Sequence record: KJ019152.1
Strand: one strand, 5' to 3'
Length of the DNA: 64,000 nt
Position 1 is the first letter of the stretch; every line of letters starts with the position of its first letter. The position numbers were made by a program, and so were the translations under genes. The notes beneath the pieces were generated by a model that worked only from the letters and a program-made list of their open reading frames with translations, had not been told where the DNA came from and did no database searches. This document shows positions 23,256 to 41,496 of the stretch, one piece after another.

Positions 23256-24734
23256 ATGGTTGTTAATCCCTTTTTCCTACATGGTTCCACTCAGGAACAA
23301 AACCTGATGCAGAATCTGGTCAATGAACAGATTCAAATGTACGGGATCGATGTATATTACATCCCTCGTACATTTATTAGGGATGCGACCATCATGCGGG
23401 AGGTCACTTCCTCTGCATTTCGATCATACTTTGTTCTAGAAGCATACCTAGAGAACTTTGATGGATATGGTGGTCAAGGAGACCTCATGTCCAAGTTTGG
23501 TATTCAAGTCAAAGATGAAGTTACACTTACTATCTCTAGGGATAGGTATGAGAATTATATTGCCCCATTCCTGAACTCCAGGATGTTGTATTTGATGGAC
23601 TCACCCCAAGATGATGGGCAAATGATGACCATCCAGAGACCCAAGGAGGGGGATCTAATCTACTTCCCACTGGGTAGAAGACTATTTGAGATTAAGTTTG
23701 TAGAGCATGAGAAACCCTTCTATCAGTTAGGTAAGGGATATGTTTATGAACTTCAGTGCGAACTATTTGAGTATGAAGATGAAGTCCTCGATACAAGTGT
23801 CGATGAGATCGATAGTACTCTACTTAATAAGGGTTATATTACAACTATTAACCTTGTCCCCGTTAGTAACAGAGCTGTTGTTACACCCAAAACTGGCACT
23901 GGATACATCACAGAACTAACTATCTTCAATGAGGGTAGTGGATATAAGTCACCACCTAGTATTGTTATTGATCCACCACAACTGGGAACAGATCCTAGTG
24001 TTGTTGCACTACTCACTAGACCAGATTCTAGTACCCCTGAACCTGCAATCAAACAGGTTGTAGTATTTAATAGTGGTTCTGGATATGTGGAACCACCTAG
24101 TGTTATTGCAGTTGGTGGTGAAGGAGAGGGTTCTATTATTAGAGCAGGTATCAATAGCCTATCTGATGGTATTATTGATTTTGTTGTATCTGAGAAGGGT
24201 GCTGGTTATCCAGAAGATGTGGATATCATTGTATATGATGATGACAATAATATTGTGGCACAGGGTAAAGGGCTATCTGATGGTGATCAGATTGTATCTG
24301 CTATTATCACAAACCCAGGAAAAGACCTACCATCCAGTGTGAGGGCTATTGTGGCAAAACCAGCAGATGAGGGTGATGGTGTCTTTGTCTACAATGAGAT
24401 TGTAGTGGGACAACAGTCCGGTATGAGAGCGAGAGTTCGTGGATGGGATCAACCCAATTACCAACTACATATCACTAACTTAGATCCCACTCAGAAGTCT
24501 ATTAACTTCCAAGCAGGTGAGACTATTGTTGGTGAAACCAGTGGTGCCAAGTATTCCCTCAAGAACTTTGTGGATACACAATCCAAAGCAGACTTCTACT
24601 CCGATAACGATAATATTGGAAATGAGGGTGAGGATATTGTGAATACAGATGACGAATATAACCAATTCTTTGATACTAATAGGAACTACTTTAACCCTGA
24701 TTTCAGTAACAACGATCCCTTCGGTGAACAGTAA
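23256..24734 (+). CDS. gp14: Neck protein gp14 (extended)
   Basis: 'NPFFLHGS..EQ.L.Q.L..EQI.MYG.DVYYIPR', 'PKEGDLIYFP', 'FEIKFVEHEKPFYQLGK'. Confidence 0.95.
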   Translation: MVVNPFFLHGSTQEQNLMQNLVNEQIQMYGIDVYYIPRTFIRDATIMREVTSSAFRSYFVLEAYLENFDGYGGQGDLMSKFGIQVKDEVTLTISRDRYENYIAPFLNSRMLYLMDSPQDDGQMMTIQRPKEGDLIYFPLGRRLFEIKFVEHEKPFYQLGKGYVYELQCELFEYEDEVLDTSVDEIDSTLLNKGYITTINLVPVSNRAVVTPKTGTGYITELTIFNEGSGYKSPPSIVIDPPQLGTDPSVVALLTRPDSSTPEPAIKQVVVFNSGSGYVEPPSVIAVGGEGEGSIIRAGINSLSDGIIDFVVSEKGAGYPEDVDIIVYDDDNNIVAQGKGLSDGDQIVSAIITNPGKDLPSSVRAIVAKPADEGDGVFVYNEIVVGQQSGMRARVRGWDQPNYQLHITNLDPTQKSINFQAGETIVGETSGAKYSLKNFVDTQSKADFYSDNDNIGNEGEDIVNTDDEYNQFFDTNRNYFNPDFSNNDPFGEQ

Positions 24735-25997: not shown

Positions 25998-26411
25998 ATG
26001 GCTTACGAAGAAGAAAATCAGTGTAACTCTACACCTGAGGGTGAAGATTGCCCTAAGCACAAGAAGAAGTGCTGCAATTCTGAGGAAAAGAAACGCAAAA
26101 AGGGGATGTACGGTCTCCAGGATGAGGATAGTGAAGGCGATGAGTCCTCACAAGAGAATGGTGGCATGCCTCAGGATAGTGCCAATGAGGAAAGACAACT
26201 TAACCCAGACACTGACCTGAAGGACATGTCCAGTGATAGTAAGAAGAGGGCTATGGATTCTTTCCGTGAAAGAAGTTCTGAAGCTAAGAAAAGAAAATCA
26301 GATAAAGATAAGAAGGATGAATTGGCAACTGAACGCATGACAAAGGGCATAAGGTTCTTTGACAAACAGGGTTCAGGTTATATTAAAAAAGGTAAAAAGA
26401 GTTACGACTAA
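25998..26411 (+). CDS. Highly charged hypothetical protein with Cys cluster
   Basis: 137-aa ORF directly after gp16; CxxxxxGxxCPxHxxxCC; Lys/Glu rich. Confidence 0.75.
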   Translation: MAYEEENQCNSTPEGEDCPKHKKKCCNSEEKKRKKGMYGLQDEDSEGDESSQENGGMPQDSANEERQLNPDTDLKDMSSDSKKRAMDSFRERSSEAKKRKSDKDKKDELATERMTKGIRFFDKQGSGYIKKGKKSYD

Positions 26412-26413
26412 CC

Positions 26414-27025
26414 ATGACACTAATTAACGAACATAATCTTGGAGCTTGGAAAGCTTTAAACCCCCAAGACAAAAGACTACAAGCATTAACACTCTCAGAA
26501 CTATTGGAGAATGCCGATCCAACTAGCGTAGATTTCAGTAGTATTACCTTTAAGGGTCGTACAGACGGTCTACTCGGAGATGGTCTCGATTGTGCTGAAA
26601 GTATTGGTTTTGTTGTATTTGATTGTGTATGTCTGTTCCTAGGAGCAGCAACACTAAGAGCTTCAGCCACTGCTGAGGTAGCCGAAGATATGGCTAAAGC
26701 TGCAGAACCTGTTGTTAACCAACTAACACAGTATATTAGAACCATTTCTGATTCAGCATCATCAACATATGATGTTGCTTATGCTGTGTTTAAGGTAATC
26801 TCTACCATCTACAGTGGAGGTGCTTTAGGTGCTGTTTGTGGTGTGTTCTTCACGTCCCTAACTTGGTACAACGCTATTCTCTATGGAATGACTGCTGTTG
26901 GTACTATTATGGCTGCTTTGGCAACTGATGGTGCTGCTGAAATTGGTATTATTGTTGTGGAAATAGCAACAGCTGGTTTCCTAATTTCCGACAGTGTTGC
27001 CTGCTCTAAAGCATGCAACTACTGA
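26414..27025 (+). CDS. Hypothetical hydrophobic helical protein, 203 aa
   Basis: ORF 2 nt after the previous stop; long Ala/Gly/Val/Ile-rich hydrophobic segments. Confidence 0.75.
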   Translation: MTLINEHNLGAWKALNPQDKRLQALTLSELLENADPTSVDFSSITFKGRTDGLLGDGLDCAESIGFVVFDCVCLFLGAATLRASATAEVAEDMAKAAEPVVNQLTQYIRTISDSASSTYDVAYAVFKVISTIYSGGALGAVCGVFFTSLTWYNAILYGMTAVGTIMAALATDGAAEIGIIVVEIATAGFLISDSVACSKACNY

Positions 27026-27029
27026 GTTG

Positions 27030-27036
27030 CTAAATA
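27030..27036 (+). promoter_or_regulatory. Late promoter variant CTAAATA
   Basis: Immediately after the 203-aa gene, upstream of the 936-aa gene. Confidence 0.55.
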
Positions 27037-27126: not shown

Positions 27127-29937
27127 ATGGGTAATCTACACAAATGGTTTTCAGGTTCCAAGTCCAAAGACGGCAAGTCTGGATGGGTGAATGTAAAGAC
27201 TGGTGGTACCTGTGCAAGTGATGAACCCGGAGAGGGCACACCCAAGTGTGTGTCTTCATCTAAAAGAGCTAGTATGACCAAATCCGAAAGGGAGTCTGCT
27301 TCTCGTAGAAAGAAAGCTGCTGACCCTGGACAACAACAAAAGTCAGGTGCTGCTAAACCAACTTACGTATCTACCGACAAGCCTAAGAAGATGAAAAAAG
27401 AACATTTTTCTAATTGGAGGGATGATACACCAGAACCAATGGTCAATGAACTCTTTGGAATGGGTAAGAAGAAGGAAAAGAAAAACAACGGTTCTGGTGG
27501 TTCTTTCTCAGCTTCTACGGCAGAGGCGAATGCTAGATCCAGGGGGTGGAAACCTGAAAACGAAAAACCAAAACCCATGGGTGCTTTTGGTCCAGAAAAG
27601 GGAACGAGTAAATCCCCAGACCAATTCAGAAATGTGAAGAAAGCTTTGGGTATTCGTCCAAAACCAGAACCCAAAGTTACAAGTCAAACAAAACCAGAAC
27701 CCAAAGTTACAAGTCAAACAAAACCAGAACCCAAAGTTACAAGTCAAACAAAAACAGATCCTACACCCAAGTCCAATCCATATTCTGGAAAGGATAAGTT
27801 AAAACCCCAAAGTTTTAGTACTGCAGTTAAATCTGGTACTAAAATGAAAAAGAGTACTCCATCAGCCCCAGGTAAAATTGTGACTCAACAAGGTAATCAA
27901 AAAGAGCAGTTTTCTAACTGGAGAGATAACTACGTAGCCACTGAGCACGAGTTCATCGATCTCATCAAACCAGAACCTATGGTAGGTATCTCTGAAACCA
28001 AGGAAGGTCAGATGAAATCTGGTAGGGAGCAGTATAAGAAAGAGAAGGAGGAAGGTCGTTATGGTGGAACCAAACCTTCTAATGAGAGAGTCGCAAAACT
28101 CATGAAGAAGCTGAAGGAGGAGACCAAGCAAGATGGTCCCGAACCTACAAGGAAACAGACTCGTGGTGCTATGAAGAACATTCGTAGTAAAATGAATACT
28201 GCAAGTCACAAAGACCCAGATAAGAAGAAGACAAAGCAAGAACTAGCTTTCCAAAAGGCTAGAGCTAAGGCTTGGGGTATGACTGAAGGAAAGGAAGAGA
28301 AGAGAAAGGATGCAATGCCCGAGGGTGATGTTGGATATGAGATTCATAAGAAAGCAGTTGCCCAATACAACAAACAGAACCCTAGTAAGAAGGTGAAGGA
28401 GGAAGTAGAAATCTCCGAAGAGGATAAGAAAGGTTCAGGTAGTGGTAAGAAAGACGCCTGTTACAATAAGGTGAAGGCATCAGCTTCTGTATGGCCATCA
28501 GCTTATGCTTCTGGTCGTTTAGTTCAGTGTCGTAAGAAAGGTGCTGCCAACTATGGCAAATCCAAGAATGAGGAGTTTATCAGTATTGTAGCCTCCGAGT
28601 ATTTCATCAATGAAGGACTCAATGATGAGGGAGTGGCAGAACTAGTTGATTTGTTGGGACCTATTCAGTTTGGTGAATTGGTTAATGAGATTGCTGAGGG
28701 TGTAGAAGAAGATCTACTTACTGAAGCTAGAGCTGGTGGAGTTAAGATTGAACCCAAGAATAAGTCTGGTACTAGAGTTTCAGATCTATCCAAGGGAGCT
28801 AGAACTAGAGCTATTAACACACTCCGTAAAGAGAAGGCAGCTAAGAGAGCTGGTGAAGGTGAAGGTGGCAAGGGCAGTCTAAAGGACTCCCTAAAATCAC
28901 AAGCAAAGGCAGCTAAGAAACCAGAACCCAAAAAGGCTAAGAAGGAAGAACCCAAAAAGGAAGCAGCTAAACCAGCAGTTGAGAAGGCTAAAGCCACTCA
29001 ACCTAAGAAGAGAGGTTTCTTAGATTCTGTAGCCCGTCAAGTTAATAAGGGTATGGATCGTCATAGAAAGGCAATGGAACTAGCCCGTGAAACTGGTAAG
29101 GTAGCTAAGAAGGCAGCCAATATTGGTGGTCAAGTTGCTAAAGGTGCAGTTCAAGGTGTTAAGGACACCGCCAAGACAACCAAAAACGTAGCTGATAAAC
29201 TAAAAGAAGAATACGTATTGGTTGTATCTGAAGAGTGGAAGCCTGATCCCACTGAGAAACGTGAAAAGAAAGCTGCTAAGCTAGGTAGGGATGAAGAGAT
29301 CGAGAAAGGCAAGTCCAAGAAATATGGACGCGATGAATCCAAGATTGACAAACTCTACAAGCGTCGTATGGCTGTTCAGTTCAAAAAGAAAATGAGTGAG
29401 GAAAGACTAGACGAACTCAAGTGTTGGAAAGGTTACAAGCGTAAGAAGGGTTCTACACCTGGAGCTCCTGGTTCCTGTGTGAAAGAAGGTTTCTCCAGTT
29501 GGAGAGACGACCTTGACCTTATGGAAGGTGTTGCAGCTTGGCAACGTAAGTTTGTTTCTGAAGAATCCAAAAGAGAACTTCAGATTCGTGCTTCGAAGGG
29601 TGACAAGGCAGCCATGAAGAAACTTCATCAACTTCGTGCCGATGGTAAGATTGGTAAAGAACCTGGTTTTGAACCTAAGAGAGATCTTCCTGAAGGTGCA
29701 GCATGGACACGTAAAGAGGGAAAGAATAAAGCCGGGGGGCTTAACGAGAAGGGACGTAAGTCTTACGAACGAGAGAACCCCGGCAGTGACCTCAAAGCAC
29801 CACAACCTGAGGGTGGTAGTCGCAAGAAGTCGTTTTGCGCACGTATGAGCGGAATGAAGAAGAAACTAACCTCTTCTAAGACTGCTAACGATCCCGATTC
29901 AAGAATCAATAAGTCACTAAGAAAATGGAACTGCTGA
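27127..29937 (+). CDS. Lys-rich modular protein (candidate internal head polyprotein) with C-terminal DUF6321-like module
   Basis: 936-aa ORF of short basic modules separated by Glu-ending linkers; C-terminal 'AWTRKEGKN..GGLNEKGR.SY...GSDLKAP...R.KSFCARM.GMK.KLTS.KTA.DP.SRINKSLRKWNC'. Confidence 0.8.
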   Translation: MGNLHKWFSGSKSKDGKSGWVNVKTGGTCASDEPGEGTPKCVSSSKRASMTKSERESASRRKKAADPGQQQKSGAAKPTYVSTDKPKKMKKEHFSNWRDDTPEPMVNELFGMGKKKEKKNNGSGGSFSASTAEANARSRGWKPENEKPKPMGAFGPEKGTSKSPDQFRNVKKALGIRPKPEPKVTSQTKPEPKVTSQTKPEPKVTSQTKTDPTPKSNPYSGKDKLKPQSFSTAVKSGTKMKKSTPSAPGKIVTQQGNQKEQFSNWRDNYVATEHEFIDLIKPEPMVGISETKEGQMKSGREQYKKEKEEGRYGGTKPSNERVAKLMKKLKEETKQDGPEPTRKQTRGAMKNIRSKMNTASHKDPDKKKTKQELAFQKARAKAWGMTEGKEEKRKDAMPEGDVGYEIHKKAVAQYNKQNPSKKVKEEVEISEEDKKGSGSGKKDACYNKVKASASVWPSAYASGRLVQCRKKGAANYGKSKNEEFISIVASEYFINEGLNDEGVAELVDLLGPIQFGELVNEIAEGVEEDLLTEARAGGVKIEPKNKSGTRVSDLSKGARTRAINTLRKEKAAKRAGEGEGGKGSLKDSLKSQAKAAKKPEPKKAKKEEPKKEAAKPAVEKAKATQPKKRGFLDSVARQVNKGMDRHRKAMELARETGKVAKKAANIGGQVAKGAVQGVKDTAKTTKNVADKLKEEYVLVVSEEWKPDPTEKREKKAAKLGRDEEIEKGKSKKYGRDESKIDKLYKRRMAVQFKKKMSEERLDELKCWKGYKRKKGSTPGAPGSCVKEGFSSWRDDLDLMEGVAAWQRKFVSEESKRELQIRASKGDKAAMKKLHQLRADGKIGKEPGFEPKRDLPEGAAWTRKEGKNKAGGLNEKGRKSYERENPGSDLKAPQPEGGSRKKSFCARMSGMKKKLTSSKTANDPDSRINKSLRKWNC
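27661..27750 (+). repeat. Three perfect 30-bp tandem repeats encoding KPEPKVTSQT
   Basis: aaaccagaacccaaagttacaagtcaaaca x3, in frame, followed by a degenerate partial fourth copy. Confidence 0.97.
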
Positions 29938-29948
29938 GAACCGCCCTG

Positions 29949-29975
29949 TCCCACACTTGGTTTGTGGGAATTTTG
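29949..29975 (+). terminator. Probable intrinsic terminator
   Basis: TCCCACA-7nt-TGTGGGA stem then ATTTT, 11 nt after the 936-aa gene stop; the U-tract is weak. Confidence 0.5.
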
Positions 29976-30043: not shown

Positions 30044-31255
30044 ATGTCTATCCTAACTCACACTAATAATAACTACGAAAGGTACGATGAGGACAATGTT
30101 CTAGCGTCACCTCAGCCTGCATTTAGGAGTGAGAGTATGGATGCAGTTGGTTGGACTAATTTTACCTGGAAAGATTTTGATGGTGATTATGTCAAGACTC
30201 TAGTGGGTGGTGGTATAACTTCTATTAATGAGTATGTGAAGAGAGACGTAGATAATAATATAGTCACTCAACCCCAATACATCAGGCACGATATAGACAA
30301 TAACCCAGTAGGTAGTTTGAATCCACTAGAAATTGTAGGTGTTGGTAATATCACAGCACCTAACGGATTTGCTGTCGGTAGGGATATGGCTGGTCAGGTT
30401 GCTGGTTATCAGGGTGGTACTGAACCCATCACTGTTGAAGGTCAGTTACAGAAACAAGAAACCCCTGGTGGTGCTTGGATTGGTATTAGTCCTTGGACGG
30501 CAGTTGATACTGCAGTAAAAGAAATAGACTCTTCTTTGGTGGGAGCTAAACTTCGTATTTCTACTAGAATTCAAGATGCCATAATCGCTCCATCATATCT
30601 CACTACCAATACTCCTGCTTCGGATGTTGTTGTTGGTGAGATGACTCCCGATGTGAAAGGTACTCTTACTTCTAGTGGATCGGACCCTGCATATCCAGGA
30701 GATGTACTTACTCAGACAGAAGGCACTATAACCGGTGGTATCGCTCCATTTACTAAGTCATATCAATGGTTTAGAAGAGAAACTGGCACCACGAATGCGT
30801 ATGCATTCTTTGGTGCTCCAGATGGATTGACTTATACTATTCAGTATAGTGATATTGGTTATGATGTTAAATCAAGAACTAGGTGGCAAGATTCATATAA
30901 CTATCTTAGAACCGTCGGTACGATTCCAAACCACATTGAGGTTATAGCAGAACCACTAGAATTAGTATCAAAGGGAACTCTCGATGGAGTTGGTCAGTCA
31001 GGCACAGTCCTAACACAAACTGCAGCAGTATTCAGTGGTGGTGTTCCCCCATTCACTTATAGATATGAATGGGTTAGGAGAGTGACTGGTGAGTCTGGAT
31101 TCTTCGAGTTTGGTGCTCCAGATGGTCTTCAGTATATTATTAGGTCTTCTGATATCGGTTATGATATTAGAGGAAGAACCGAAATCTTTGACTCCCTAGG
31201 AAATTCGAAGAGTAGTAGTTCTACTATTCCTGGAGATGTTTCAGTAACATCATAA
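30044..31255 (+). CDS. Virion-type protein with tandem Ig-like domains
   Basis: Two repeats 'Y.W.RR.TG....F..FGAPDGL.Y.I..SDIGYD(V/I)..R' plus a third degenerate one ('SSLVGAKLRI'). Confidence 0.75.
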   Translation: MSILTHTNNNYERYDEDNVLASPQPAFRSESMDAVGWTNFTWKDFDGDYVKTLVGGGITSINEYVKRDVDNNIVTQPQYIRHDIDNNPVGSLNPLEIVGVGNITAPNGFAVGRDMAGQVAGYQGGTEPITVEGQLQKQETPGGAWIGISPWTAVDTAVKEIDSSLVGAKLRISTRIQDAIIAPSYLTTNTPASDVVVGEMTPDVKGTLTSSGSDPAYPGDVLTQTEGTITGGIAPFTKSYQWFRRETGTTNAYAFFGAPDGLTYTIQYSDIGYDVKSRTRWQDSYNYLRTVGTIPNHIEVIAEPLELVSKGTLDGVGQSGTVLTQTAAVFSGGVPPFTYRYEWVRRVTGESGFFEFGAPDGLQYIIRSSDIGYDIRGRTEIFDSLGNSKSSSSTIPGDVSVTS

Positions 31256-37732: not shown

Positions 37733-37960
37733 ATGGAAATCGACACATCGGTTGTGGATGCCATTGTGAGTGGTGAAACACCCGCAGGTATTACACAATC
37801 CATTAAGGATCTTCTGTATGCAAAAGCAAGCGAAAGGGTTGATACCTATCGTGATGTAGTAGCAGACAGAATGTTTGGTGGTTCCGAAGTTCCCGAAGGG
37901 GAAACAGAAGAACCAGTAGCCGAACTTGAGAGTGATGAGGAAGGGGTAGAAGAAGAGTGA
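37733..37960 (+). CDS. gp67: Prohead core protein gp67-like
   Basis: Small acidic protein after the portal; 'I.DLLYAKA.ERVD...V...MFG' and Glu-rich tail. Confidence 0.7.
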   Translation: MEIDTSVVDAIVSGETPAGITQSIKDLLYAKASERVDTYRDVVADRMFGGSEVPEGETEEPVAELESDEEGVEEE

Positions 37961-38214
37961 TTAAGATTGTATTCTCCGAGGTTGATAGTCCAACGGACTC
38001 TGACCAGGCAATCAGTCTCAACAACTCTAGTGGTGTTAGGGCAATTAATTGTTCTAAAAAACCATATCTACTCTACCTAATCGATAACATAAGTGGAGAG
38101 ACTAGATCACTTACATTAGTGAGTAATGAAAGTCTTATCCTCAAAAAACACAGTTACGATAAGGTATATGCTTCATCGAAAACTGTTCGTATCGCTGGAG
38201 TAAGCATCTACTAA
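37957..38214 (+). CDS. Conserved small protein between g67 and g21
   Basis: GTG start overlaps the previous stop; beta-rich 85 aa; same position as in other cyanomyoviruses. Confidence 0.7.
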   Translation: MIKIVFSEVDSPTDSDQAISLNNSSGVRAINCSKKPYLLYLIDNISGETRSLTLVSNESLILKKHSYDKVYASSKTVRIAGVSIY

Positions 38215-38215
38215 C

Positions 38216-38866
38216 ATGAAACTAATTACAGAAGAAATTAACAAGGTTGAATTTATTGTCGAAGAAAACAATGGCAAACAGTCATGTTTTATTGAGGGAA
38301 ACTTCCTTCAGGGCAATATTAAAAACCGAAATGGTCGTGTCTATAGAACCGAGACACTAGCTCGTGAAGTTGCTCGTTACAATGAACAGTATGTTCAGAA
38401 CGGACGAGCTCTCGGTGAACTTGGGCATCCTGATGGACCCACAGTTAACTTGGACCGAGTATCACATAACATTATTTCACTTCGTCAAGAGGGAAATAAT
38501 TTCATAGGTAAGGCAAAACTTCTTGATACTCCTATGGGAAATATCGCTAAGAGCCTTATTGGTGAAGGTGTTAAACTTGGAGTTTCTTCTCGTGGTGTTG
38601 GTTCCATTAGTGAAACGAAGCAAGGATATAAGCTTGTTGGTGAAGACTTTATGTTGGCAACCGCAGCTGATATTGTAGCTGATCCTAGTGCCCCAGACGC
38701 TTTTGTTCAGGGTATCATGGAAGGAAAAGAGTGGGTTTTTGTTAATGGACTCTTGAGAGAGAGTGACATTAAGAGCACACAGTCTACAATTGACAAACTA
38801 GTTGTCACAAAGGAACTTGAGGAGAAGAAGATTCAACTTTTTCAAGATTTTCTTTCAAATCTATAA
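38216..38866 (+). CDS. gp21: Prohead protease gp21
   Basis: 'MKLITEE', 'KNRNGRVY', 'ALGELGHPDGPTVNLDRVSH', 'LGVSSRG.GS', 'DIVADPSAPDAFV.GIME'. Confidence 0.98.
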   Translation: MKLITEEINKVEFIVEENNGKQSCFIEGNFLQGNIKNRNGRVYRTETLAREVARYNEQYVQNGRALGELGHPDGPTVNLDRVSHNIISLRQEGNNFIGKAKLLDTPMGNIAKSLIGEGVKLGVSSRGVGSISETKQGYKLVGEDFMLATAADIVADPSAPDAFVQGIMEGKEWVFVNGLLRESDIKSTQSTIDKLVVTKELEEKKIQLFQDFLSNL

Positions 38867-40092: not shown

Positions 40093-41496
40093 ATGTACAA
40101 TTCCGCAAACTCCGAATTTCTCCAGGAGAAGTGGGCACCAATCCTCGAGCACGGTGAGTCCATCCAGGACGCACACAAGCGTGCCGTAACTGCCCAACTT
40201 CTAGAGAACCAGGAAGTAGCCCTTTCCGAAGAGCGTGCTTTCCTTTCAGAAGCTCCAACAGTAAACACCGACCCTAACGCAACTGGCAACGCTGGTTTCT
40301 CTGGTAATGGTGATCAATCAGTAGCTGGTTTCGATCCAGTACTCATCAGCCTCATCCGTCGTTCAATGCCTAACTTGATGGCATACGACCTTTGTGGTGT
40401 TCAGCCAATGAACGGTCCTACCGGTCTTATCTTCGCGATGAGAAGCCGTTATGACTCTCAGACAGGCGACGAGACCTTCTACAACGAAGTCAACTCTGCC
40501 TTCTCCGCACAGAACCAGTCCGGTACAGCTACTCAGGGTAACTACTCTGGTCAGGTTGGCGCTGGTAACACAGTTGGTTTCGGTACAACCGCACAACGTG
40601 GTTCTAACCCCTCCATCCTCAACCCCGAGCCCGGTGACCAAGTTGGTTACAACGTAGGCCAGGGTATGTTGACCCAGGACGCTGAGAACCTTGGCGAAAC
40701 TGGTACAGAGTTCAATGAGATGGGCTTCTCAATCGAGAAGGTCACCGTAACTGCTAAGTCACGGGCACTCAAGGCTCAGTACAGCATGGAATTGGCTCAG
40801 GATCTCAAAGCGATCCACGGTCTAAACGCCGAAGCTGAACTATCTAACATCCTCGCCTCTGAAATTCTTTCAGAGATCAACAGAGAAGTTGTTAGAACTA
40901 TCTACAAGTCAGCTGTATTCGGTGCTCAGAACAACGTAGCCACTCCTGGTGTATTTGACCTAGACGTTGATTCCAACGGTAGATGGTCAGTTGAGAAGTT
41001 CAAAGGACTTATCTTCCAGATCGAAAGAGACGCTAACGCGATCGCGCAACAAACTCGTAGAGGAAAGGGTAACTTCATCCTTTGTTCCGCGGATGTTGCT
41101 TCAGCTCTAACCATGGCTGGTGTACTTGACTACACCCCAGCACTTAACGCTAACCTTAACGTTGATGACACCGGTAACACCTTCGCAGGTGTTCTACAGG
41201 GTAAGTATAGAGTCTACATTGACCCATACGCAGCTAACGTCAGCAACAACCAGTACTATGTCGCTGGTTACAAAGGTTCCTCACCTTATGACGCTGGTCT
41301 CTTTTATTGCCCCTATGTCCCACTACAGATGGTACGTAGCGTTGGTCAGGACACCTTCCAGCCACGTATCGGATTTAAGACCCGTTACGGCATGGTCGCA
41401 AACCCATTCGCAGAAGGTCTTGAGGCTGGATACGGACGTATCACCCCTAACTCCAACGTCTACTACAGACGCGTTCAAGTCAAAAATCTTATGTGA
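40093..41496 (+). CDS. gp23: Major capsid protein gp23
   Basis: 'EKW.PIL.H', 'FDPVLISLIRRSMPNL.AYD.CGVQPM.GPTGLIFAMR', 'AKSRALKA.YS.ELAQDLKAIHGL.AE', 'PRIGFKTRYG'. Confidence 0.99.
   Translation: MYNSANSEFLQEKWAPILEHGESIQDAHKRAVTAQLLENQEVALSEERAFLSEAPTVNTDPNATGNAGFSGNGDQSVAGFDPVLISLIRRSMPNLMAYDLCGVQPMNGPTGLIFAMRSRYDSQTGDETFYNEVNSAFSAQNQSGTATQGNYSGQVGAGNTVGFGTTAQRGSNPSILNPEPGDQVGYNVGQGMLTQDAENLGETGTEFNEMGFSIEKVTVTAKSRALKAQYSMELAQDLKAIHGLNAEAELSNILASEILSEINREVVRTIYKSAVFGAQNNVATPGVFDLDVDSNGRWSVEKFKGLIFQIERDANAIAQQTRRGKGNFILCSADVASALTMAGVLDYTPALNANLNVDDTGNTFAGVLQGKYRVYIDPYAANVSNNQYYVAGYKGSSPYDAGLFYCPYVPLQMVRSVGQDTFQPRIGFKTRYGMVANPFAEGLEAGYGRITPNSNVYYRRVQVKNLM

What the first reader, a model, noticed from the sequence alone, without database searches (positions are those of the whole stretch)
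27127..29937. 936-aa Lys-rich 'beads-on-a-string' protein: candidate polyprotein cut by the prohead protease into internal capsid peptides
Seen: a series of short basic modules (e.g. KDACYNKVK...VWPSAYASGRLVQCRKKG, KCWKGYKRKKGSTPGAPGSCVKE, and the C-terminal DUF6321-like unit). They are separated by linkers ending in hydrophobic-x-Glu (MVNE, ISE, LKEE, MTE, VKEE, LLTE, VSEE, LDE, LME, LPE). A linker motif E-x-F-S-(N/S)-W-R-D recurs three times (about 27400, 27904, 29485), and one long acidic spacer is present. Established: T4 gp21 cleaves after Glu at (I/L)-x-E sites and matures internal proteins, which are small, basic, injected with the DNA, and can counter host defences (IPI*). Inference: this is a modular cargo polyprotein releasing many DNA-binding or anti-defence peptides on infection. 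The gene has a late-type promoter and sits between the terminase genes.
Basis: partly seen in the sequence, partly recalled or inferred. Interest (0 to 1): 0.72.

Follow-up and report, generated by a model that had tools for sequence, protein, structure and literature searches.

The report
Modular lysine-rich cyanophage virion protein
This 936-residue gene of a marine T4-like cyanophage encodes small conserved basic domains joined by floppy linkers, and each domain is preceded by the short motif that the phage's head-maturation protease recognises, so it may be cut into small DNA-associated head proteins, though no cleavage has been shown.

Summary
Window 27127-29937 (+) is an intact 936-aa ORF with 17.7% Lys and pI 9.9. 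It lies between the terminase genes of Synechococcus phage ACG-2014f. It belongs to the T4-GC119 / PHROG 3477 / DUF6321 family, which has more than 5,000 clusters at 50% identity.

Four conserved two-cysteine modules (M1, S, K, DUF6321) are joined by disordered, lineage-specific linkers. AF2 gives 533 of 936 residues a pLDDT below 50. The order of S and K differs between homologues.

The main new result concerns 150 non-redundant relatives. In these, a hydrophobic-x-Glu triplet sits at a fixed register just before every module (63-81% per module, against 1.9% background). The triplet is depleted inside M1 and K and enriched in linkers. The phage encodes a gp21-type S77 protease, and its gp23 keeps L-S-E|A at the T4 maturation site.

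Family members were found by mass spectrometry in virions of S-SM1 and S-SCSM1. In podoviruses, DUF6321 is a separate roughly 80-aa gene in the head-gene cluster.

Cleavage, internal location and DNA binding are still inferences, and nothing supports an anti-defence role. Verdict: a known uncharacterised family with a well-supported but unproven polyprotein model. Interest 0.62.

The parts
27127..29937 (+). Whole ORF, 936 aa: a Lys-rich modular protein of the T4-GC119 / PHROG 3477 / DUF6321 family
27030..27036 (+). Near-consensus late-promoter-like heptamer, 97 nt upstream of the ATG
   Evidence: Four of the six + strand copies in the window lie 31-97 nt upstream of structural-gene or long-ORF starts. 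Function not shown.
27127..27402 (+). Module M1 (aa 1-92), two conserved Cys (C29, C41). It is the most conserved bead and is found at variable positions in relatives.
   Evidence: pLDDT 64-89 over aa 1-70
27400..27450 (+). W-linker 1 (aa 92-108): the F-S-N-W-R-D motif, ending in V-N-E
   Evidence: pLDDT below 50
27451..27903 (+). Linker L1 (aa 109-259): disordered and rich in K/P/T/S. It contains a 30-nt tandem repeat at 27659-27758 (3.3 copies).
   Evidence: It is absent from the 768-aa isolate variants.
27904..27996 (+). W-linker 2 (aa 260-290), ending in I-S-E
27997..28419 (+). Linker L2 (aa 291-431): basic and partly helical, ending in I-S-E directly before the S module
28420..28566 (+). 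Module S (aa 432-480), invariant C445 and C468, three short helices. It gives a weak sub-threshold DUF5872 match.
28567..28734 (+). Acidic helical spacer (aa 481-536) with six hydrophobic-x-Glu triplets in about 45 aa
   Evidence: It is lineage-specific (29 of 263 relatives).
28735..29415 (+). Lys/Ala-rich region (aa 537-763): mostly disordered with long helices at 631-664 and 737-762, ending in L-D-E before the K module
29416..29484 (+). Module K (aa 764-786): a beta-hairpin with invariant C766 and C784
29485..29526 (+). W-linker 3 (aa 787-800), ending in L-M-E
29527..29694 (+). Insertion X (aa 801-856): a two-helix unit that duplicates the A-A-W-x-R-K start of DUF6321 and ends in L-P-E. It is absent from the 839-880-aa isolate variants.
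   Evidence: pLDDT 85-92 for aa 812-838
29695..29934 (+). Module D = DUF6321 (aa 857-936), invariant C904 and C936, a four-helix domain
   Evidence: pLDDT 75.8; no PDB fold match
29949..29969 (+). Terminator-like hairpin followed by a T-run, 12 nt after the stop codon
38216..38866 (+). gp21-type prohead protease (Peptidase_S77), the proposed processing enzyme
   Evidence: E 6.8e-33
40093..41496 (+). gp23 major capsid protein. Its propeptide carries five hydrophobic-x-Glu triplets, and L-S-E53|A aligns with the T4 gp23 maturation site. It serves to calibrate the protease's specificity.

Best explanation
The gene encodes a late, virion-associated, polycationic modular protein of the T4-GC119/DUF6321 family. 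The most likely mechanism has four steps. [quoted passage not shown] In this protein those sites are V-N-E108, I-S-E290, I-S-E431, L-D-E763, L-M-E800 and L-P-E856. Cutting would release small basic two-cysteine domains of about 4-12 kDa (M1, S-containing, K, DUF6321) plus disposable linker pieces. The basic products would stay with the packaged DNA. This would fill the role that the internal proteins play in T4, since no T4-type internal proteins were recognised here by any family, PDB or fold search.

Shown: the architecture, the positional conservation of the triplet, the co-encoded protease, and virion presence of relatives.

Inferred: cleavage itself, location inside the head, DNA binding and delivery into the cell.
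For: 1. Modules and disorder. Four modules are conserved in about 240-250 of 263 relatives, while the linkers are lineage-specific. All 8 Cys are invariant or nearly so, in four pairs. AF2 places confident beads between segments with pLDDT below 50, and all six junction sites fall in those segments.

2. Conserved junction triplet. In 150 representatives of 50%-identity clusters, [LIVMF]-x-E sits at a fixed register before each module. The figures are M1 70% (Glu 83%), K 63%, D 55% at one register and 90% within 12 aa, and S 81%. Background is 1.9% per position. P2 is variable, and the wider flanks differ between modules.

3. Independence from context. The triplet is kept whatever lies upstream. 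Leaderless relatives, and this protein itself, begin exactly at the predicted post-site residue.

4. Distribution of the triplet. It is depleted inside M1 (15 against 51.8 +/- 6.9) and K (1 against 7.7 +/- 2.8), absent from S, and enriched in linkers (1360 against 958 +/- 24).

5. Protease and calibration. An S77 protease gene lies 8.3 kb downstream. The phage's gp23 has L-S-E|A aligned to the T4 gp23 maturation point. Five of the six junction sites in this protein are L/I-x-E.

6. Virion presence. T4-GC119 was detected in S-SM1 virions with 13 counts (PMC3037559 Suppl. Table 8). S-SCSM1 ORF29 is a family member annotated as a virion protein.

7. Podoviruses. In podoviruses, where no prohead-protease gene is annotated in the head-gene regions I fetched, DUF6321 is a stand-alone 81-101-aa gene in the head-gene cluster. 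One copy starts at the same A-W-x-R-K motif.

8. Literature. T4-type prohead proteases cut core and internal proteins C-terminal to Glu at a short motif (PMC5694885 and PMC9958956).
Against: There is no direct evidence of cleavage or of an internal location.

This protein starts directly with M1 and has no capsid-targeting-type leader. Some relatives have leaders of only 3-5 residues that still end in the triplet, which could mean the triplet is part of the M1 fold rather than a site.

DUF6321 of the cyanomyovirus type carries one conserved internal L-N-E (70 of 100).

P3 is often Val or Met rather than Leu or Ile across the family.

Site density in this protein is no higher than in gp20 or gp17.

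The Syn9 orthologue was not detected in virions.

In T4, small cleavage peptides mostly leave the head, so retention has to be assumed.

P0073 is encoded in a replication-gene neighbourhood.
Confidence: 0.45

Rival explanations
1. The protein is an uncleaved internal or DNA-associated virion protein. It stays whole and binds packaged DNA through its many basic beads. The hydrophobic-x-Glu triplets are structural N-terminal caps of the modules, or partner-binding motifs, rather than protease sites.
For: Net charge is +87 and relatives are present in virions. Leaders of only 3-5 aa still end in the triplet. DUF6321 tolerates a conserved internal L-N-E. Triplet density is ordinary for this phage.
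Against: Four unrelated modules share the same P3/P1 pattern, with variable P2 and different surrounding sequence. The triplets lie in segments with pLDDT below 50, outside the folded beads. Stand-alone podovirus copies lack the triplet and still encode the domain. The triplet is depleted inside M1 and K.
Confidence: 0.2
2. The protein is an external, flexible polycationic virion appendage, attached to capsid, neck or fibres. It would aid electrostatic contact with the negatively charged cell surface, and its two-cysteine mini-domains would be stabilised by disulfides in oxidising sea water.
For: Conserved Cys pairs in every module are typical of extracellular mini-domains. In S-SCSM1 the gp16-gp17 interval also holds tail-fibre genes. 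In S-SM1 the neighbouring gene is an abundant structural protein. The long disordered linkers would suit a tethered arrangement.
Against: The conserved junction triplets have no role in this model. The capsid of P-SCSP1u, whose relative P-SCSP1a encodes a stand-alone DUF6321 next to the capsid gene, shows no decoration proteins (PMC10575957). A Methylophilales phage DUF6321 copy lacks both Cys. No fibre, adhesin or carbohydrate-binding domain was found.
Confidence: 0.18
3. The protein is not a true structural component. It would be an intracellular DNA-binding or condensing protein made late in infection, which sticks to DNA or particles and co-purifies with virions.
For: It is extremely basic. 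One relative is encoded among replication genes. It was not detected in Syn9 virions.
Against: It was detected in two independent preparations, that of S-SCSM1 CsCl-purified. It sits within the structural and packaging gene block here and in a 35%-identical relative. Stand-alone copies lie inside head-gene clusters in four podoviruses and beside the terminase and portal genes in a fifth.
Confidence: 0.08
4. The released modules are specifically anti-defence cargo, by analogy with T4 IPI*.
For: Only the analogy with T4 IPI*, together with the family's rapid module gain, loss and shuffling.
Against: There is no sequence or fold similarity to any known inhibitor. M1, S and DUF6321 are highly conserved, at 70-90% identity across the family. 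That is the opposite of the fast divergence expected of counter-defence proteins. The variability lies in the linkers.
Confidence: 0.05

Closest known systems
T4-GC119 'structural protein' of cyanomyoviruses (Sullivan et al. 2010) = PHROG 3477/727 = DUF6321-containing proteins
   Same: This is the same family. PHROG 3477 gives a full-length match. The protein shares the M1/S/K/D modules with S-SM1 SSM1_115, Syn9 gp114 and S-SCSM1 ORF29. It occupies the same slot after gp16.
   Different: It is one of the longest members, at 936 aa against a reported range of 92-995 aa. It carries lineage-specific linkers, an acidic spacer, three W-linkers and an insertion that duplicates the start of DUF6321. 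No function has been assigned to the family in the sources I could read.
T4 internal proteins IPI, IPII, IPIII and Alt
   Same: The proposed working principle is the same: basic proteins built into the prohead core, trimmed by gp21 after Glu, kept with the DNA and delivered to the cell.
   Different: No sequence or fold similarity was found. The T4 proteins are single products with a 10-19-aa N-terminal targeting propeptide. This protein would be a multi-product precursor, and it has no leader.
T4 gp22, gp67 and gp68 prohead core proteins
   Same: They are cut at many sites into small peptides by gp21. The acidic helical spacer here has a similar site density (6 in about 45 aa) to this phage's gp22 (6.3%) and to the gp23 propeptide.
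   Different: Those proteins are acidic scaffolds whose fragments largely leave the head. This protein is overall strongly basic, and its conserved beads look like end products.
Inner-body and ejection proteins of phiKZ, 201phi2-1 and SPN3US
   Same: These are many head-internal proteins processed by a gp21-related protease at x-x-Glu motifs, often at several sites per protein.
   Different: The motif there has small residues at P3 (A/S/G). Those proteins show no homology to this one, and they are not built from shuffled mini-domains.

Membership tests
Pfam DUF6321 (PF19846) | Match to the family profile above the curated cut-off | tested here: met
   aa 865-934, E 8.8e-21, 74.8 bits against a cut-off of 28.5
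T4-GC119 / PHROG 3477 | Full-length profile match and shared modules with named members | tested here: met
   phrog_3477 matches 1-936 against 1-928/928 with E 0. The modules are shared with S-SM1 SSM1_115 (GC 119), Syn9 gp114 and S-SCSM1 ORF29.
T4-GC119 / PHROG 3477 | Presence in purified virions | not testable with these tools
   Shown for relatives only: S-SM1 with 13 counts and S-SCSM1. Not detected in Syn9.
T4 internal proteins (IPI/IPII/IPIII) | Sequence or fold relationship | tested here: not met
   No named hit came back in Pfam, PHROGs, NCBI-independent PDB sequence search or Foldseek. The protein I had in mind was T4 IPI*.
T4 internal proteins (IPI/IPII/IPIII) | Short N-terminal targeting propeptide ending in a protease site | tested here: not met
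   This protein begins M-G-N directly at M1. However, 22 of 33 relatives with an N-terminal M1 have 3-14-aa leaders ending in the triplet.
Substrates of the gp21-type (S77) prohead protease | Protease encoded by the same genome | tested here: met
   Peptidase_S77 at 38216-38866, E 6.8e-33. It is also present next to the 35%-identical relative P0021.
Substrates of the gp21-type (S77) prohead protease | Hydrophobic-x-Glu sites in accessible regions, conserved in relatives | tested here: met
   All six junction sites lie in segments with pLDDT below 50. Positional conservation is 55-81% per register against 1.9% background. The triplet is depleted inside M1 and K.
Substrates of the gp21-type (S77) prohead protease | Observed mature N-termini after Glu | not testable with these tools
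   No peptide-level data were available. The published tables give counts only.
Pfam DUF5872 (S module) | Profile match above the cut-off | tested here: inconclusive
   E 0.0039, 18.2 bits against a cut-off of 27.5. A BFVD DUF5872 protein matched at E 1.8e-3.

The most novel reading that the evidence does not exclude
T4-like marine cyanophages may make their internal head proteins as a shuffled polyprotein. The prohead protease would cut conserved hydrophobic-x-Glu junctions and release a standard kit of disulfide-capable, polycationic mini-proteins (M1, S, K, DUF6321). These would travel with the DNA. Marine podoviruses would encode the same kit as separate tiny genes in their head modules. 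On this reading the family is a widespread 'phage protamine' set, present in some of the most abundant viruses in the ocean.
Probability: 0.3. Interest if true: 0.8.

Novelty: new variant of a known kind. Interest (0 to 1): 0.62.

Why it matters
The family is very large. More than 5,000 clusters at 50% identity match this protein, nearly all from marine samples. It is carried by T4-like cyanophages that infect Synechococcus and Prochlorococcus, yet it is annotated only as 'hypothetical', 'DUF6321' or 'virion protein'.

No T4-type internal head protein was recognised in this phage's head-gene block by any family search, and none came up in the cyanophage papers I read. If this family fills that role as a protease-processed polyprotein, two things follow. 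It would explain what neutralises and accompanies the packaged DNA in these phages. It would also add a polyprotein strategy to tailed-phage head maturation.

The conserved junction triplets make the idea directly testable with peptide-level virion data that at least two laboratories have already generated.

Tried and rejected
1. Site density as evidence. [LIVMF]-x-E density in the target (2.46%) is no higher than in gp20 (2.56%) or gp17 (2.74%). I dropped this argument in favour of positional conservation.

2. Fold assignment. Nothing was found at E <= 0.001 for the full-length model against the PDB. The DUF6321-only model (pLDDT 75.8) had no PDB match even at E <= 10. BFVD returned only family members. 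PDB sequence search found nothing.

3. Pfam on the separate pieces gave only a sub-threshold DUF5872 hit and one spurious weak hit. An NCBIfam call failed because I gave an out-of-frame coordinate, and I did not repeat it.

4. Literature. 'DUF6321' and 'Syn9 gp114' returned no papers. A search for a cyanophage late-promoter paper was unproductive, so the promoter claim stays unverified.

5. Decoration-protein idea for the podovirus copies. This is weakened by the P-SCSP1u capsid structure, which has no decoration proteins.

6. Zinc-binding modules. I rejected this as the default reading because each module has only two Cys and no conserved His.

7. Anti-defence reading. No supporting evidence was found. 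The high conservation of the modules argues against it.
Full report
**Identity and context**

The window is 100% identical over this gene to Synechococcus phage ACG-2014f (KJ019152.1). This is a T4-like cyanomyovirus of the Kyanoviridae, genus Atlauavirus.

The ORF 27127..29937 (+) is intact and encodes 936 aa. The gene order around it is as follows:
- gp13, gp14, gp15, then gp16 (small terminase)
- two small ORFs of 137 and 203 aa
- the target
- a 403-aa ORF
- gp17 (large terminase), gp18, gp19, gp20 (portal)
- an 85-aa ORF
- gp21 (Peptidase_S77), gp22 and gp23

A terminator-like hairpin follows the stop codon. A 7-of-8 near-match to the late-promoter octamer lies 97 nt upstream of the ATG. 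Full or near matches also precede gp15, gp18, gp20 and gp22. I could not confirm the variant motif from the literature.

**Observation check**

- Lys is 17.7%, K+R is 217 against D+E 130, and pI is 9.9.
- The listed linker endings are all there.
- The W-R-D motif occurs at aa 92, 260 and 787.
- An acidic helical stretch covers aa 481-536.
- The C-terminus is DUF6321.

The eight cysteines form four pairs, one pair per conserved module. All eight are invariant or nearly invariant in a 110-sequence alignment.

**What the family is**

PHROG 3477 matches the protein end to end. The orthologues are Sullivan et al.'s T4-GC119, present in 15 of 16 cyanomyovirus genomes at sizes of 276-2985 nt.

HMMER against 1.84 billion representatives found 5,042 clusters at E <= 0.001. 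Segment-wise searches of 263 retrieved relatives gave these counts:

| Segment | Relatives with a match (of 263) |
|---|---|
| M1 (aa 1-92) | 251 |
| S (aa about 436-482) | 245 |
| D = DUF6321 | 235 |
| K | most relatives, by motif search |
| Other segments | 7-63 |

Module order varies. M1-S-K-D occurs 133 times, M1-K-S-D 55 times, and there are several rarer orders. The beads have therefore been shuffled.

Within the single species ACG-2014f the protein ranges from 549 to 936 aa. Whole units between repeated junction motifs are gained or lost.

At least 7 of the 30 listed isolate records annotate the gene as two CDSs. In the two I examined, one frameshifting indel each accounts for the split. 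In P-SSM3 the M1-bearing and DUF6321-bearing proteins are separate genes.

**Structure**

AF2 with the family alignment gave a mean pLDDT of 51.8, with 533 of 936 residues below 50. Confident islands are:
- M1 (aa 1-70)
- S (441-478)
- K hairpin (765-788)
- a two-helix insertion (812-838)
- DUF6321 (871-936)
- a few long helices

DUF6321 modelled alone is a four-helix domain with pLDDT 75.8. No solved structure resembles either model. No PDB sequence is related.

**The key test: do module boundaries coincide with Glu sites?**

I used 150 representatives of 50%-identity clusters and anchored on invariant motifs inside each module. The background rate of [LIVMF]-x-E is 1.9% per position.

| Module | [LIVMF]-x-E at the junction |
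|---|---|
| M1 | 70% at one fixed register (Glu itself 83%) |
| K | 63% at one fixed register |
| D | 55% at one register; 90% within 12 aa, against 17.6% expected |
| S | 81% over two adjacent registers |

P2 is variable, and the wider flanks differ between the four modules. This is therefore not one inherited linker.

The triplet persists whatever lies upstream, whether a poly-Gly/Asn linker, another module or a short N-terminal leader. Relatives without a leader start exactly at the residue that follows the triplet in S-SM1 and Syn9. The present protein does the same.

A Pelagibacter podovirus stand-alone DUF6321 begins at the same A-W-x-R-K motif.

Control anchors inside the modules show the triplet in 0-1% of cases.

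| Region | Triplets observed | Expected from shuffling |
|---|---|---|
| M1 bodies | 15 | 51.8 +/- 6.9 |
| K bodies | 1 | 7.7 +/- 2.8 |
| S bodies | 0 | 0.4 +/- 0.6 |
| Linkers | 1360 | 958 +/- 24 |

One exception exists. Cyanomyovirus DUF6321 has a conserved internal L-N-E in 70 of 100 cases. The podovirus copies have Ala, Lys or Gln there instead.

In this protein the six junction sites all lie in segments with pLDDT below 50. Five of the six are L/I-x-E.

**Calibration of the protease**

The phage encodes a Peptidase_S77 homologue. Its gp23 propeptide has five such triplets. The last, L-S-E53|A, aligns with the point where the deposited mature T4 gp23 chain begins, 65 residues into the precursor.

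Reviews state that T4 gp21 degrades gp22, gp67 and gp68. It also trims gp23, gp24, Alt and the internal proteins. Related proteases of giant phages cut after Glu at short motifs, often at several sites per protein.

**Virion association**

T4-GC119 was detected in purified S-SM1 virions with 13 counts. It was not detected in Syn9 and is absent from S-PM2.

S-SCSM1 ORF29 lies between terS and terL and carries M1, S, K and D with junction triplets. It is annotated as a virion protein in a genome whose authors mark MS-detected products that way.

In five podoviruses the stand-alone DUF6321 gene has these positions:
- S-CBP4 and Eistla: between the scaffold and capsid genes
- P-SCSP1a and HTVC115P: just after the capsid gene
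- MEP402: beside the terminase gene

In these phages it is flanked by other tiny, extremely basic ORFs. The P-SCSP1u capsid has no decoration proteins, which argues against an ordered external role there.

**Interpretation**

The best-supported model is a late virion protein that the gp21-type protease cuts at the conserved junctions into small basic domains that stay with the DNA. I put the whole chain at 0.45. The architecture, the family membership and the junction pattern are solid. The cleavage, the location and the DNA binding are inferred.

The rivals are:
- an uncleaved internal protein (0.20)
- an external polycationic appendage with disulfide-stapled mini-domains (0.18)
- a co-purifying intracellular DNA-binding protein (0.08)
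- a specifically anti-defence cargo (0.05), which has no support and is disfavoured by the strong conservation of the modules

**Novelty**

The gene family is known but uncharacterised. A polyprotein route to internal head proteins would be a new variant of the T4 and phiKZ head-processing theme. I found no paper that proposes it.

I used them as search patterns.

I also used the finding's L/I-x-E rule, broadened to [LIVMF]-x-E, as a regular expression in scripts. The rule is corroborated only in part by tool output, namely the gp23 alignment and the review text.

In my private reasoning I also recalled a few short peptide-like strings from memory.

Noticed in passing
window 27659-27758: A 30-nt tandem repeat (3.3 copies, 98% matches) encodes a repeated 10-aa K/P/T/S unit in linker L1. 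The reference isolate NC_026927 differs by exactly one 30-nt unit.
   Followed up: partly
window 25998-26411: A 137-aa ORF directly after gp16. It has 16.8% Lys and 12.4% Glu, an N-terminal cysteine cluster, no Pfam family, and matches PHROG 3368 (unknown function).
   Followed up: no
window 26414-27025: A 203-aa ORF with a long Gly/Ala/hydrophobic C-terminal half that looks membrane-associated. It matches PHROG 3518 (unknown function).
   Followed up: no
window 30044-31255: A 403-aa ORF between the target and gp17. It has two internal repeats of about 95 aa, no Pfam family, and matches PHROG 3552 (unknown function).
   Followed up: no
window 37957-38214: An 85-aa GTG-start ORF between the portal and protease genes, in the slot where T4 has gp67 and gp68. 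No family match was found, so it may not be a real gene.
   Followed up: no
L005 5201-5377; L007 3205-3396; L008 2821-2970: In three podoviruses the stand-alone DUF6321 gene lies next to a second conserved tiny ORF of 49-63 aa (K+R 16-21, D+E 1-3). Eistla and MEP402 also have Lys-rich ORFs of 34-37 aa. Together these form a cluster of protamine-like genes in the head module.
   Followed up: partly
L014 1060-4272 (Prochlorococcus phage P-SSM3): The M1-bearing protein (310 aa) and the DUF6321-bearing protein (345 aa) are separate genes with four small genes between them.
   Followed up: partly
ACG-2014f isolates (L010, L011, L012): At least 7 of the 30 listed isolate genomes annotate this gene as two CDSs. 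In two that I checked, a single frameshifting indel each accounts for the split. A third isolate differs by many indels. Whether these are real or assembly errors in the repeat region is unknown.
   Followed up: partly
window 29740-29748 (aa 872-874) and relatives: Cyanomyovirus DUF6321 has a conserved internal L-N-E (70 of 100 representatives). The five podovirus stand-alone copies I read have Ala or Lys in place of the Glu.
   Followed up: partly
relatives P0036, P0045, P0049, P0065, P0087, P0100, P0105: Some family members also carry a PF02643 (DUF192) domain.
   Followed up: no
window 23256-24734 (gp14): The 492-aa gp14 homologue has an extra region (aa about 213-484) that weakly matches baseplate-wedge, fibre and structural-protein PHROGs. 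This suggests an inserted domain.
   Followed up: no
L015 (metagenome contig, 98 kb): The family member P0073 is encoded among DNA polymerase, RecA-like, helicase and ribonucleotide reductase genes rather than between the terminase genes. The family's genomic position is therefore not fixed.
   Followed up: no
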